A program made the position numbers and the translations under genes. Under the pieces are notes generated by a model. That model worked only from the letters and a program-made list of their open reading frames with translations. It had not been told where the DNA came from and did no database searches. Positions 1 through 4,582 of a DNA stretch of 64,000 nucleotides are shown here, piece after piece. The number at the start of each line of letters is the position of its first letter. Within the stretch, counting starts at the first letter, position 1. Origin of the DNA: Guillardia theta CCMP2712 (lineage: Eukaryota; Protista; Cryptophyta); NCBI RefSeq assembly GCF_000315625.1, contig NW_005434635.1, positions 1 through 64,000 on the forward strand, given 5' to 3'.

Positions 1-2102
1 CTGCAACAAGCCGAATCAGTGGTCAAGTCGTTTGGGCCTCTGCCCCGCCCTCGCCCTACCCCGTCCTGCTACTCTCGACCCTCTGCCGCACGCTTGCTCC
101 TGACTTTGCGCAGCCTTGCCTGCCTGTCTTGCTGCCTGCCTGCGCCCCTCTTGCCTGCCTGCCTGCGACCCTCTTGCCTGCCTGCCTGCCTGCCTGTCTT
201 GGTCTGCCTCTGGCTACCGTCGCTACTCACATGCAAGACCCGTCGGCTCCTTGGCACCGGCCGTGCCCGCTGCAGTTGCCGTCTACCGTACAGCCCGCCT
301 CGCAGCTCGCCCCGTACTGGTCCTCCCGGCAAGGCGAGCAGGTCCGGCCTCCGAAGCCTCCCTTGCACTCGCACCTCCCCTCCCGACACTCTCCCCGCTC
401 CTCCCCGCCGCAGTCTGCCGCGCTGCTGCAGTAGCCTCCCGGNNNNNNNNNNNNNNNNNNNNNNNNNNNNNNNNNNNNNNNNNNNNNNNNNNNNNNNNNN
501 NNNNNNNNNNNNNNNNNNNNNNNNNNNNNNNNNNNNNNNNNNNNNNNNNNNNNNNNNNNNNNNNNNNNNNNNNNNNNNNNNNNNNNNNNNNNNNNNNNNN
601 NNNNNNNNNNNNNNNNNNNNNNNNNNNNNNNNNNNNNNNNNNNNNNNNNNNNNNNNNNNNNNNNNNNNNNNNNNNNNNNNNNNNNNNNNNNNNNNNNNNN
701 NNNNNNNNNNNNNNNNNNNNNNNNNNNNNNNNNNNNNNNNNNNNNNNNNNNNNNNNNNNNNNNNNNNNNNNNNNNNNNNNNNNNNNNNNNNNNNNNNNNN
801 NNNNNNNNNNNNNNNNNNNNNNNNNNNNNNNNNNNNNNNNNNNNNNNNNNNNNNNNNNNNNNNNNNNNNNNNNNNNNNNNNNNNNNNNNNNNNNNNNNNN
901 NNNNNNNNNNNNNNNNNNNNNNNNNNNNNNNNNNNNNNNNNNNNNNNNNNNNNNNNNNNNNNNNNNNNNNNNNNNNNNNNNNNNNNNNCTGCCCGCAAGT
1001 CGTCAGCGCCTCTGCCCCGCCCTCGCCCTACCCCGTCCTGCTACTCCCGACCCTCTGCCGCTCGCATTGCGATTAGACTTCTAAACCCTTGCCTGCCTGT
1101 CTTGCTGCCTGCCCGCGCCCCTCTTGCCTGCCTGCCTGCCTGCGACCCTCTTGCCTGCCTGCCTGCGCCCCTCTTGCCTGCCTGCCTGTTTGCCTGTCTT
1201 GGTCTGCCTCTGGCTACCGTCGCTACTCACATGCAAGACCCGTCGGCTCCTCGGCACCGGCCGTGCCCGCTGCAGTTGCCGTCTACCGTACAGCCCGCCT
1301 CGCAGCTCGCCCCGTACTGGTCCTCCCGGCAAGGCGAGCAGGTCCGGCCTCCGAAGCCTCCCTTGCACTCGCACCTCCCCTCCCGACACTCTCCCCGCTC
1401 CTCCCCGCCGCAGTCTGCCGCGCTGCTGCAGTAGCCTCCCGGCCTGCCTACCTCGCTGGTCTCGATGGAGCAGTTATGGCCCGTGTATCCCGTAGCGCAT
1501 CTGCCCGCAAGTCGTCAGCGCCTCTGCCCCGCCCTCGCCCTACCCCGTCCTGCTACTCCCGACCCTCTGCCGCTCGCTTGCTCCTGACTTTGCGCAGCCT
1601 TGCCTGCCTGTCTTGCTGCCTGCCCGCGCCCCTCTTGCCTGCCTGCCTGCCTGCCTGCCTGTCTTGGTCTGCCTCTGGCTACCGTCGCTACTCACATGCA
1701 AGACCCGTCGGCTCCTCGGCACCGGCCGTGCCCGCTGCAGTTGCCGTCTACCGTACAGCCCGCCTCGCAGCTCGCCCCGTACTGGTCCTCCCGGCAAGGC
1801 GAGCAGGTCCGGCCTCCGAAGCCTCCCTTGCACTCGCACCTCCCCTCCCGACACTCTCCCCGCTCCTCCCCGCCGCAGTCTGCCGCGCTGCTGCAGTAGC
1901 CTCCCGGCCTGCCTACCTCGCTGGTCTCGATGGAGCAGTTATGGCCCGTGTATCCCGTAGCGCATCTGCCCGCAAGTCGTCAGCGCCTCTGCCCCGCCCT
2001 CGCCCTACCCCGTCCTGCTACTCCCGACCCTCTGCCGCTCGCTTGCTCCTGACTTTGCGCAGCCTTGCCTGCCTGTCTTGCTGCCTGCCTGCGCCCCTCT
2101 TG

Positions 2103-2152
<50 letters not shown>

Positions 2153-3945
2153 TTGGTCTGCCTCTGGCTACCGTCGCTACTCACATGCAAGACCCGTCGG
2201 CTCCTTGGCACCGGCCGTGCCCGCTGCAGTTGCCGTCTACCGTACAGCCCGCCTCGCAGCTCGCCCCGTACTGGTCCTCCCGGCAAGGCGAGCAGGTCCG
2301 GCCTCCGAAGCCTCCCTTGCACTCGCACCTCCCCTCCCGACACTCTCCCCGCTCCTCCCCGCCGCAGTCTGCCGCGCTGCTGCAGTAGCCTCCCGGCCTG
2401 CCTACCTCGCTGGTCTCGATGGAGCAGTTATGGCCCGTGTATCCCGTAGCGCATCTGCCCGCAAGTCGTCAGCGCCTCTGCCCCGCCCTCGCCCTACCCC
2501 GTCCTGCTACTCCCGACCCTCTGCCGCTCGCTTGCTCCTGACTTTGCGCAGCCTTGCCTGCCTGTCTTGCTGCCTGCCTGCGCCCCTCTTGCCTGCCTGC
2601 CTGCCTGCCTGCCTGTCTTGGTCTGCCTCTGGCTACCGTCGCTACTCACATGCAAGACCCGTCGGCTCCTTGGCACCGGCCGTGCCCGCTGCAGTTGCCG
2701 TCTACCGTACAGCCCGCCTCGCAGCTCGCCCCGTACTGGTCCTCCCGGCAAGGCGAGCAGGTCCGGCCTCCGAAGCCTCCCTTGCACTCGCACCTCCCCT
2801 CCCGACACTCTCCCCGCTCCTCCCCGCCGCAGTCTGCCGCGCTGCTGCAGTAGCCTCCCGGCCTGCCTACCTCGCTGGTCTCGATGGAGCAGTTATGGCC
2901 CGTGTATCCCGTAGCGCATCTGCCCGCAAGTCGTCAGCGCCTCTGCCCCGCCCTCGCCCTACCCCGTCCTGCTACTCCCGACCCTCTGCCGCTCGCTTGC
3001 TCCTGACTTTGCGCAGCCTTGCCTGCCTGTCTTGCTGCCTGCCCGCGCCCCTCTTGCCTGCCTGCCTGCCTGCGCCCCTATTGCCTGCCTGCCTGTCTTG
3101 GTCTGTCTTGGTCTGCCTCTGGCTACCGTCGCTACTCACATGCAAGACCCGTCGGCTCCTCGGCACCGGCCGTGCCCGCTGCAGTTGCCGTCTACCGTAC
3201 AGCCCGCCTCGCAGCTCGCCCCGTACTGGTCCTCCCGGCAAGGCGAGCAGGTCCGGCCTCCGAAGCCTCCCTTGCACTCGCACCTCCCCTCCCGACACTC
3301 TCCCCGCTCCTTCCCGCCGCAGTCTGCCGCGCTGCTGCAGTAGCCTCCCGGCCTGCCTACCTCGCTGGTCTCGATGGAGCAGTTATGGCCCGTGTATCCC
3401 GTAGCGCATCTGCCCGCAAGTCGTCAGCGCCTCTGCCCCGCCCTCGCCCTACCCCGTCCTGCTACTCCCGACCCTCTGCCACTCGCTTGCTCCTGACTTT
3501 GCGCAGCCTTGCCTGCCTGTCTTGCTGCCTGCCTGCGCCCCTCTTGCCTGCCTGCCTGCCTGCCTGCCCGCCTGCCTGTCTGCCTGCCTGCCTGCTTGCC
3601 TGCCTGTCTTGGTCTGCCTCTGGCTACCGTCGCTACTCACATGCAAGACCCGTCGGCTCCTCGGCACCTTCCATGTGCGCTGCAGTTTGTGTACGAGTCA
3701 CAGAATATGTTGCAATCAAAACCAAAGGTGGTTTGTCGGCAGATATCGTTTTCTGTTTCATTTCTGTTGCTGGTTGACATGTTTCCACAATCAATGCATT
3801 CTGTTGATACATCGTTGTTTCTGTCAATTGTTTTTGTGTCTGAAGGAAGGTTTGTACCTCGGATTTCTCGGTTTCCTTCGACACACAACAACAAAGAGAT
3901 GAAAATGATCATCATCTTCCTACGATGAAAGTCCTTCCATGCCAT
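1..3945 (-). CDS. Secreted/surface EGF-like (laminin/tenascin-type) repeat protein; multi-exon, 3' part runs off the left edge of the window
   Basis: Exon 1 (3945-3641) reads MAWKDFHRRKMMIIFISLLLCVEG (signal peptide)...CRQTTFGFDCNIFCDSYTNCSAHGRCRGADGSC, followed by a GTGAGT donor. Near-identical 270-nt exons follow at 3409-3140, 2919-2650, 2454-2185, 1965-1696 and 1500-1231, plus a partial copy from the gap edge to 231. Each is flanked by GCTGAC...GGGCAG and GTGAGT and reads ICATGYTGHNCSIETSEVGRPGGYCSSAADCGGEERGECREGRCECKGGFGGRTCSPCREDQYGASCEAGCTVDGNCSGHGRCRGADGSC. The last intron (230-1) ends in TTGCAG at position 1. Confidence 0.88.
36..3668. repeat. Tandem array of 465-512 bp units (exon+intron duplications) with an internal (CCTG)n microsatellite
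   Basis: Unit starts (ctgcccgcaagtcgtcagcg) lie at 989, 1501, 1966, 2455, 2920 and 3410, giving spacings of 512, 465, 489, 465 and 490. The length variation is confined to the CCTG-rich part. Confidence 0.97.
443..988. other. Assembly gap (546 N) inside the tandem array
   Basis: Run of N. Confidence 1.
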
Positions 3946-4582
3946 CGTCTCTCCTCTCCTTGATCCTTCAGCCGCCCTTGTCTCACATCAGCGGTCCATC
4001 AATTCAACCAGCAATGACCCCACCCCCTCAAACCGTTATAGAGATTTCATAACCCTCTTCTACCCTACATACTTGTTTCAATACCGGTACTCCTGAGCTC
4101 CTTTTACCTTGTCTATCACCCCCTTGTGAGAATGTTTCGCACTCCTGTACCCCACCCGTCCTCTACAACACCACTCGGTTTATATGCGTCACAAGGCTGA
4201 AAACCCGCAACTCCCCGTGTACGGGTGGGTCATATACCCCTACCCTGTCACCCCCCTCTCCCAGTACCCCCTCTAATGGCTCACATTCATTCCAGTGCTG
4301 TGTATTGACAGGTATGCTCCGAGGCTGCTCAGCTGGCAAGAGGCGACTGCCGGGCAGGGCGTATCCCTTCTTGCATTAGTGTCTGTGCTATGACATCTTC
4401 ACTCCTGGACAGCATCTGCTGCACCCGGTGACCCCCCAGCTTCCTCTTATTGACCCCTCGTGCGCCTTGAGCCTGGATTCCAGCTGGCACAGTTACACGG
4501 ACATGAAGAATACAACGGTTTGTAACGCATATAACCACTGTCTACCTGGTAGTCAGGGCCCCCGCAGGGACACGCATTGGCC

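What the first reader, a model, noticed from the sequence alone, without database searches (positions are those of the whole stretch)
1..3945. The 'satellite' is a homogenised exon+intron cassette array building a variable-length EGF-repeat surface protein
Seen: on the minus strand every unit is an invariant-length 270-nt exon (phase 2 at both ends, 90 aa, 14 Cys, EGF/laminin-like with NCSGHGRC..DGSC|IC..GY.G.NC spanning the junction) plus an intron with GTGAGT donor, GCTGAC branch and CAG acceptor. All length variation (introns of 231, 220, 195, 219, 195, 242 and 230 nt) lies in the intron, mainly its (CAGG)n tract, so frame is preserved even where unit length is not a multiple of 3. Five complete copies and one partial copy are visible. 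The 546-N gap equals the 58 missing exon bases plus 488 nt, i.e. one more unit. The two exon differences I spotted are both non-synonymous (R/Q in GRC[R/Q]GADG; E/K in copy 3140-3409). Inference: recent or ongoing unequal crossover or gene conversion, perhaps seeded by the microsatellite. Symmetric exons would allow copy-number change or exon skipping to tune the length of a cell-surface protein. The ORF track misses this gene because the repeat exons have no start codon.
Basis: partly seen in the sequence, partly recalled or inferred. Interest (0 to 1): 0.88.

Follow-up and report, generated by a model that had tools for sequence, protein, structure and literature searches.

The report
Tandem EGF exon-intron cassettes in a cryptophyte gene
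The "satellite" at the start of this Guillardia theta contig is the 5' part of a gene for a secreted cysteine-rich EGF-repeat protein, built from near-identical 270-base exon plus intron units; this kind of structure is known elsewhere, the gene is already in the public annotation with a wrong model, and no spliced RNA was found.

Summary
Observation confirmed. On the minus strand, exon 1 (3945-3641) starts with ATG and looks like a signal peptide. It is followed by five complete 270-nt exons and one partial exon. They are separated by GTGAGT...CTGAC...CAG introns of 231, 220, 195, 219, 195 and 242 nt. All length variation lies in a (CAGG)n tract. The exons differ at only two sites (K/E and R/Q).

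The window is Guillardia theta CCMP2712 contig C39:1-64000, so the gene runs off the contig start. The "230-nt" last intron is cut there, and the C-terminus is unseen.

The splice model rests on indirect evidence:
- The junction rebuilds a complete EGF domain that passes Pfam cut-offs.
- Three other loci in the genome carry 270-nt exons cut at the same position and phase. Where tested (C46, C119), the introns do not align between loci. pN is below pS, and all 14 Cys are invariant.
- Intronless relatives carry the same motif uninterrupted.

The public model GUITHDRAFT_139518 (305 aa) uses a donor 27 nt upstream and breaks that motif.

No spliced RNA was found: one RNA read, and only unspliced collapsed-unit contigs. 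The N gap fits one hidden unit, but continuity and copy number are untested. Depth hints at more copies than assembled. "Surface protein" and "length tuning" remain inference. This is a new member of a known kind, of moderate interest.

The parts
3641..3945 (-). Exon 1, 305 nt. It holds the ATG, a signal-peptide-like N-terminus (basic HRRK followed by hydrophobic MMIIFISLLLCV) and a first half-unit ending ...CSAHGRCRGADGSC. The unique part is 40% GC. The last 27 nt are identical to the end of a repeat unit.
3410..3640 (-). Intron 1, 231 nt: GTGAGT donor, (CAGG)n tract, CTGAC 15 nt before the CAG acceptor.
3140..3409 (-). Repeat exon 1, 270 nt, variants K and R.
2920..3139 (-). Intron 2, 220 nt.
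2650..2919 (-). Repeat exon 2, 270 nt, variants E and Q.
2455..2649 (-). Intron 3, 195 nt.
2185..2454 (-). Repeat exon 3, 270 nt, variants E and Q; identical to exon 2.
1966..2184 (-). Intron 4, 219 nt.
1696..1965 (-). Repeat exon 4, 270 nt, variants E and R.
1501..1695 (-). Intron 5, 195 nt.
1231..1500 (-). Repeat exon 5, 270 nt, variants E and R; identical to exon 4.
989..1230 (-). Intron 6, 242 nt, with a divergent patch of about 20 nt. Its acceptor AG is the last base before the gap.
443..988 (.). Assembly gap of 546 N. It hides at least 58 nt of exon. The stated length equals 58 + 488, which is one more unit, but the real content and continuity are unknown.
231..442 (-). Partial repeat exon, 212 nt (unit positions 59-270), variants E and Q.
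1..230 (-). Last intron, cut by the contig end (at least 230 nt). It matches the other introns down to about position 36. After that it has a unique, less GC-rich 3' end with CTGAT and ...ttgttgcag, which marks the end of the array.

Best explanation
Window 1-3945 (minus strand) is the 5' part of a nuclear gene of the cryptophyte alga Guillardia theta CCMP2712. The gene encodes a secreted, cysteine-rich EGF-repeat protein. After a signal-peptide exon, the coding sequence is built from a tandem array of cassettes of about 465-512 bp. Each cassette is one 270-nt phase-2/phase-2 exon plus one G-rich intron containing a microsatellite.

Splicing at AT|GTGAGT...CAG|A joins the two halves of a teneurin/tenascin-type six-Cys EGF module that the intron splits between its 4th and 5th Cys. 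Each exon also carries a complete eight-Cys module. The protein therefore grows by 90 residues (14 Cys) per cassette.

The array arose and is kept uniform, introns included, by unequal crossover and/or gene conversion between cassettes (inferred). The array is much more GC-rich than the rest of the gene: GC3 is 0.82 in the array against 0.45 in the unique part of exon 1. This would fit GC-biased conversion, but one paralogous array (C46) does not show it.

Shown: the anatomy; the domain rebuilt across the junction; conservation of exon length, phase, intron position and all Cys across paralogous loci. Inferred: that the gene is transcribed and spliced this way; secretion; the homogenisation mechanism. 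Unknown: the C-terminal part, the true copy number, and any variation in length.
For: - Anatomy and invariant 270-nt exons. The spliced reading is open for 551 aa.
- The 31-residue junction-spanning peptide passes Pfam gathering scores: EGF_Teneurin 30.6 bits (cut-off 24.3), EGF 23.5 (21.5), EGF_2 22.3 (22.1). A single unspliced exon gives only sub-threshold hits.
- Paralogous arrays in the same genome:
  - C46:559134-564231 has at least 10 units. Seven exons are 270 nt, one is 300 nt and one is 271 nt. Introns are 211-270 nt.
  - C119:6022-7447 has exons of 270 nt and introns of 85, 216, 217 and 114 nt.
  - C39:187052-188230 has one cassette with a duplicated intron.
  - All are cut at the same codon position between ...SC and C..GYTG..C. 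All have GT...AG borders and CTGAC 15-19 nt before the AG.
- Between loci, exons align without gaps. Protein identity is 42-61% with pS 0.45-0.74 against pN 0.28-0.42. Introns align no better than shuffled sequence. All 14 Cys are invariant, including in the intronless 92-aa repeat of GUITHDRAFT_109523.
- The motif C-x5-CSGHGRC-x6-C-x-C-x8-C is uninterrupted in intronless G. theta paralogues, in a Baffinella frigidus protein and in environmental ORFs. It occurs zero times in the public model of this locus.
- The public model was rebuilt exactly from donors 27 nt upstream and an out-of-frame last junction.
- GC contrast.
- The one RNA read laid lies in exon 1, in the orientation expected for a minus-strand RNA.
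Against: - No spliced RNA was seen. The only raw-read RNA run (X8, about 6% of it read) gave one read on exon 1 and none on the multi-copy unit.
- Three runs of uncertain kind hold only a 476-496-nt collapsed unit that includes the intron, with no joints.
- No protein in the 5.8-billion-sequence collection carries the spliced junction. No metagenome or metatranscriptome contig holds the 30-nt junction.
- Open frames in copies that are about 99% identical are not independent evidence of constraint.
- One C46 unit carries a frameshift with a TAG stop, so such arrays can hold defective copies, or the assembly has errors there.
- The GC enrichment is absent in the C46 array.
Confidence: 0.72

Rival explanations
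1. The array is a silent or decaying relic. A cassette from a once-functional EGF gene was recently amplified into a GC-rich satellite. It is no longer expressed as protein, and its open frames survive only because the copies are young.
For: - Almost no RNA signal in X8, and only unspliced unit contigs in X1, X2 and X6.
- No transcript-derived protein was found.
- Unit depth far exceeds flank depth in X6 (96 against 2.3-4.4), which suggests satellite-like amplification.
- A frameshifted unit exists in the C46 array.
Against: - An intact ATG and signal-peptide exon sit directly upstream, in phase.
- All splice signals are intact in every copy.
- There is no stop or frameshift in 551 aa.
- Divergence from paralogues shows pN below pS, and all 14 Cys are kept.
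- Only 6% of one RNA run from one condition was sampled.
Confidence: 0.15
2. The public annotation is right. Introns start 27 nt earlier, at G|GTGCCG, giving an 81-residue, 12-Cys unit without RGADGSCIC.
For: The NCBI/JGI model XP_005831547.1 uses these donors. A GT is present there in every copy.
Against: - That model destroys the six-Cys EGF motif (0 complete motifs). The motif is uninterrupted in intronless paralogues and in other organisms.
- The 27 nt it drops are conserved as coding sequence in all paralogous arrays.
- GTGAGT is the better donor.
- The model also starts at an internal Met, losing the signal peptide, and ends out of frame through a donor inside an exon.
Confidence: 0.05
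3. The tandem array is an assembly artefact. One or two real cassettes were wrongly multiplied or wrongly ordered by the assembler.
For: - The array holds an N gap and lies at a contig end.
- The paralogous arrays on C46, C119 and C40 also contain gaps.
- Short-read assemblies collapse the unit into one contig of about 490 nt.
Against: - The copies differ in intron length (195-242 nt) and in linked exon and intron variants (R with G, Q with A). An artefactual duplication would not produce that.
- Depth of the collapsed unit is many times that of the flanks. This points to more copies than assembled, not fewer.
Confidence: 0.05

Closest known systems
Paralogous cassette arrays and repeat genes of Guillardia theta itself: C46:559-564 kb, C119:6-7.5 kb, C39:187 kb, GUITHDRAFT_109523 (C40) and GUITHDRAFT_81377. 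Also Baffinella frigidus T484DRAFT_1662023.
   Same: - The same 14-Cys, 89-92-residue unit with the CSGHGRC core.
- The three intron-bearing loci have 270-nt exons, the same intron position and phase, and CTGAC 15-19 nt before the AG.
- C46 and C119 are internally homogenised arrays, as this one is.
   Different: - Units are 42-63% identical to this unit at protein level.
- Intron sequences are unrelated between the arrays tested (C39, C46, C119).
- Copy numbers differ: 1, at least 3, at least 10.
- The C40-type repeat has no introns.
- Downstream parts differ: Ephrin_rec_like repeats or a Pro/Thr-rich 27-nt repeat. Here the downstream part is unknown.
Human LPA (apolipoprotein(a)) kringle IV type 2 repeat. 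This is the textbook case of a near-identical exon plus intron cassette array giving a protein of variable length (from my own knowledge, not tested here).
   Same: Tandem units containing whole exons and introns, homogenised including the introns, frame-preserving, so copy number sets protein length.
   Different: - LPA is a mammalian gene with a unit of about 5.5 kb holding two exons and a kringle fold.
- Its copy-number polymorphism is documented in populations. Here polymorphism is untested.
- Here the unit is about 0.49 kb with one exon, and the intron splits a domain rather than lying between domains.
Tenascin/teneurin-type EGF repeats (Pfam PF23106 EGF_Teneurin, PF07974 EGF_2, PF18720 EGF_Tenascin).
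   Same: The Cys spacing C-x5-C-x5-C-x6-C-x-C-x8-C and the G..G aromatic turn of the junction-spanning module. Scores exceed the cut-offs for PF23106, PF00008 and PF07974.
   Different: - These are animal extracellular matrix and adhesion proteins. No homology beyond the EGF module was shown.
- EGF_Tenascin (16.1 bits, cut-off 25) and EGF_TEN (17.3, cut-off 65) are not reached.
- This unit also alternates with an eight-Cys module that matches only DUF7949 and EGF_2, below their cut-offs.

Membership tests
EGF-like domain (Pfam PF00008 / PF07974 / PF23106) | Six Cys with canonical spacing, scoring above the curated gathering threshold. | tested here: met
   The junction-spanning 31-residue module scores EGF_Teneurin 30.6 (cut-off 24.3), EGF 23.5 (21.5) and EGF_2 22.3 (22.1). 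This holds only after the proposed splicing. The unspliced exon alone stays below every cut-off.
Laminin-type EGF (Pfam PF00053; UniProt names L1J896 'Laminin EGF-like domain-containing protein') | Eight-Cys module matching the laminin EGF profile. | tested here: not met
   An eight-Cys stretch exists (unit residues 24-66). PF00053 is not reported at E<=1 for the unit. It scores only 12.9 bits (cut-off 21) on the junction module. The best hit for the eight-Cys part is DUF7949 at 20.2 bits (cut-off 27).
Exon-intron cassette tandem array (coding VNTR of the LPA KIV-2 kind) | Tandem near-identical units, each holding a whole exon and a whole intron. | tested here: met
   There are five complete units and one partial unit. 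Exons differ at 2 of 270 sites. Introns are near-identical outside the (CAGG)n tract.
Exon-intron cassette tandem array (coding VNTR of the LPA KIV-2 kind) | Symmetric intron phase, so any copy number keeps the frame. | tested here: met
   Exon 1 is 305 nt and every unit exon is 270 nt. The spliced reading is open for 551 aa.
Exon-intron cassette tandem array (coding VNTR of the LPA KIV-2 kind) | Cassettes are spliced into one mRNA. | tested here: inconclusive
   There was one RNA read on exon 1, no joints, and only unspliced unit contigs. No spliced protein or junction was found in the databases.
Exon-intron cassette tandem array (coding VNTR of the LPA KIV-2 kind) | Copy number differs between individuals or strains. 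| not tested
   Only one assembly was available. Reads could be laid once, and not on the repeat itself.
Secreted or surface protein | N-terminal signal peptide, and for surface attachment a membrane anchor. | tested here: inconclusive
   The N-terminus has a basic stretch followed by 12 hydrophobic residues. No predictor was run. The C-terminus lies off the contig, so no anchor can be seen.

The most novel reading that the evidence does not exclude
Guillardia theta holds a family of EGF genes that expand by independent amplification of an intron-containing cassette. Each array (at least three expanded arrays plus a single-cassette relative) is homogenised separately, with its own G-rich repetitive intron. 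These introns act as the substrate for unequal exchange or GC-biased conversion. The real arrays are several-fold longer than assembled (about 20-40 units here) and vary between strains, giving secreted or surface proteins of variable length.
Probability: 0.25. Interest if true: 0.6.

Novelty: new member of a known kind. Interest (0 to 1): 0.4.

Why it matters
- It corrects a public gene model. GUITHDRAFT_139518 should start 165 nt further upstream, carry a signal peptide, and hold 90-residue units rather than 81-residue units.
- It shows that several G. theta repeat-protein genes are under-assembled and mis-annotated, because their repeats include introns.
- It gives a compact system (0.5-kb units, four loci with 1 to at least 10 copies, plus an intronless relative) for studying how intron-bearing coding repeats expand and stay uniform in a protist, and whether GC-biased conversion accompanies that.
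- It does not reveal a new kind of genetic element.

Tried and rejected
- **RNA test.** The one read-laying run was given window 3110-4500 (a single unit), because the tool refuses long repeats. It yielded one RNA read, no joints and only unspliced unit contigs. The decisive test therefore failed for lack of data and did not give a negative result.
- **Run searches.** Both run searches found no holder on record as RNA.
- **Protein search with the 89-aa unit.** Restricted to proteins of 49-156 aa, it found no candidates.
- **Protein search with P0001.** It found only G. theta models and one ENA fragment.
- **Junction scan.** An exact 30-nt spliced-junction scan of metagenome contigs gave 0 matches.
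- **Gene continues on contig C40: rejected.** C40 starts ag|gtgcgag..., with EGF repeats on the plus strand. However, another gene model (GUITHDRAFT_81377, P0003) supplies its own N-terminus for exactly that repeat type.
- **Search for the missing 3' part.** Using the C119 post-array exon as query found many Ephrin_rec_like paralogues and small repeat contigs (C383, C635, C541), but none can be linked to this gene.
- **GC-biased conversion as a general rule.** It fits C39 and C119 but not C46.
- **Literature.** Searches found nothing on EGF repeat genes of Guillardia.
- **Copy number from contig depth.** X6 shows 96 against 2.3-4.4. The tool warns that depth is not a copy number, so this is kept only as a lead.
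Full report
**What is there**

The window is G000:C39:1-64000, the first 64 kb of a 595,616-bp contig of an 87.1-Mb, 669-contig genome. Protein look-ups identify the genome as Guillardia theta CCMP2712.

On the minus strand, an ATG at 3945 opens a 305-nt exon. Its product begins with a basic stretch, then 12 hydrophobic residues, and ends ...CSAHGRCRGADGSC. After it come exons of exactly 270 nt at 3409-3140, 2919-2650, 2454-2185, 1965-1696 and 1500-1231, and a 212-nt partial exon at 442-231. The introns between them are 231, 220, 195, 219, 195 and 242 nt. Each starts GTGAGTAGCGAC and ends GCGCTGACGACTTGCGGGCAG.

The exons differ at two sites only, K/E and R/Q, and both changes are non-synonymous. 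An alignment of the introns shows that all length differences lie in the (CAGG)n/AAGAGGGGCGC tract. Outside that tract the introns are also nearly identical, apart from a few substitutions and one divergent patch in intron 6. The R/Q exon variant is linked to a G/A variant in the following intron, so two unit subtypes are interleaved.

**Gap and contig end**

The N run at 443-988 begins immediately after an acceptor AG at 989, and sequence resumes at unit position 59. The stated 546 N equals 58 + 488, and 488 lies within the observed periods of 465-512. One hidden unit is therefore compatible, and any whole number of units keeps the frame.

The gap length is an estimate and nothing bridging it was obtained. 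Short-read assemblies collapse the unit into a single contig of 476-496 nt. Continuity is not shown.

Position 1 is the contig end, so the last intron is truncated at 230 nt or more. It matches the other introns down to about position 36 and then becomes unique and less GC-rich (CTGAT...ttgttgcag). This looks like the true 3' edge of the array. The rest of the gene is not on this contig.

**Is the exon/intron reading right?**

Direct RNA evidence was not obtained. The repeat itself could not be sent to read laying, because the tool refuses long repeats, so window 3110-4500 (one unit) was laid. About 6% of the one raw-read RNA run (X8) was read. It gave a single read in exon 1, in the orientation expected for a minus-strand RNA. 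Runs X1, X2 and X6, whose kind is uncertain, hold only the unspliced unit. No joints were reported.

1. The 31 residues spanning the junction score above the Pfam gathering thresholds for EGF_Teneurin, EGF and EGF_2. The unspliced exon alone gives only sub-threshold hits.
2. The same design recurs in the genome.
   - C46:559134-564231 has at least ten units. Seven exons are 270 nt, one is 300 nt from an in-frame 30-nt duplication, and one is 271 nt with a TAG. Introns are 211-270 nt.
   - C119:6022-7447 has 270-nt exons and introns of 85, 216, 217 and 114 nt. The lengths printed are off by one because of my indexing, and are corrected here.
   - C39:187052-188230 has one cassette flanked by two near-identical introns.
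   - In all of them the intron sits at the same codon position between ...SC and C..GYTG..C. It has GT...AG ends and carries CTGAC 15-19 nt before the AG.
3. Between loci the exons align without gaps at 42-61% protein identity, with pN (0.28-0.42) below pS (0.45-0.74). The introns align no better than shuffled sequence. All 14 Cys are invariant across five unit types.
4. In intronless relatives the motif C-x5-CSGHGRC-x6-C-x-C-x8-C is uninterrupted. These relatives are the 92-residue repeat of GUITHDRAFT_109523 on C40, GUITHDRAFT_81377, a Baffinella frigidus protein and environmental ORFs.

**Public annotation**

The locus is already annotated as GUITHDRAFT_139518 / XP_005831547.1 / UniProt L1J896, 305 aa. 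I rebuilt that model exactly from the genome:
- It starts at an internal Met (position 3780), so it lacks the signal peptide.
- It uses a donor G|GTGCC 27 nt upstream of the GTGAGT donor, which removes RGADGSCIC and two Cys from every unit.
- It ends out of frame through a donor inside an exon.
- It contains no complete copy of the EGF motif.

**How it most likely works**

Each cassette adds 90 residues: an eight-Cys module plus the two halves of a six-Cys EGF module that are completed by the neighbouring exons. Because the exon is symmetric in phase, any number of cassettes yields an open frame.

Identity within the array is near-complete, introns included. Identity to the nearest paralogue (184 kb away on the same contig) is only 63%. 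This implies recent amplification and/or continuing homogenisation by unequal exchange or conversion. That step is inferred, not shown.

The identical tract starts about 27 nt before the end of exon 1 and ends about 195 nt into the last intron.

The array is 68-70% GC with GC3 of 0.82. The unique part of exon 1 is 40% GC with GC3 of 0.45, and the flanking genome is 42-56% GC. C119 shows the same contrast, but C46 does not. GC-biased conversion is therefore a possible contributor, not an established one.

**What the protein is**

It is a secreted cysteine-rich EGF-repeat protein. "Cell-surface" is not established, because no C-terminus is visible. Paralogues continue into long Ephrin_rec_like repeat regions on C119 and C46, or into a Pro/Thr-rich 27-nt repeat on C39:188.4-189.0 kb.

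**Copy number**

In X6 the collapsed unit has word depth 96, against 4.4 and 2.3 for the single-copy flanks. In X1 and X2 only the unit is assembled at all. The tool warns that such depths are not copy numbers. As a lead, this suggests that the real array, or other unassembled copies, exceeds the seven or so units in the assembly.

**Comparison and verdict**

Its mechanism belongs to a known kind: coding tandem repeats whose units include introns, with the LPA KIV-2 array as the classic case (my knowledge). The domains are ordinary EGF-like modules.

What is new is local:
- a corrected gene model;
- a family of at least three expanded, independently homogenised cassette arrays, plus a single-cassette relative, in a cryptophyte;
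- an intron that splits the EGF module rather than separating modules.

Expression, splicing, strain variation and exon skipping remain untested. Literature searches found no prior description.

An earlier scan note on this window mentioned alloxanthin. That pointed me to cryptophytes before settled the organism.

Noticed in passing
G000:C40:1-about 13000 (+), locus L032: An uninterrupted open frame of at least 4362 aa starts at the very first base of contig C40. It is made of intronless 92-residue (276-nt) near-identical EGF repeats and a second repeat type, with two N gaps. The public model GUITHDRAFT_109523 (466 aa, partial) covers only a piece of it.
   Followed up: partly
G000:C46:559615-559885 (-), locus L029: One unit of the C46 cassette array is 271 nt and has a TAG in frame. 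Another (561117-561416) is 300 nt through an in-frame 30-nt duplication. These are either real defective or variant cassettes, or assembly errors.
   Followed up: no
G000:C119:1-5946 (-), locus L030; also C383, C635: Downstream of the C119 cassette array the gene continues as a 1345-aa and then a 645-aa open frame of Ephrin_rec_like repeats, with a period of about 1.35 kb at 98% identity. It runs off the contig start. Small contigs C383 and C635 hold 98% identical copies and are probably unplaced parts of the same gene.
   Followed up: partly
G000:C39:188380-189030 (+), locus L031: A 27-nt tandem repeat encodes a Pro/Thr/Ser-rich (APTTSTT-like) mucin-type stretch. It lies directly after the single-cassette EGF paralogue.
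   Followed up: no
window 3110-3507: A lake-water run labelled METAGENOMIC RNA-Seq (X2, 2025) holds the same unspliced unit with only 3 differing letters, at depth 11.6. It holds none of the single-copy flank. G. theta or a very close relative (or carry-over) is present in that sample.
   Followed up: no
window 1-3700 and loci L029, L030, L031: All four intron families are strongly purine- and G-rich on the transcribed strand: (CAGG)n here, and GGAGG/GAGAGG-type runs in C119 and C39:187 kb. GC skew over the array is about -0.31 on the plus strand.
   Followed up: no
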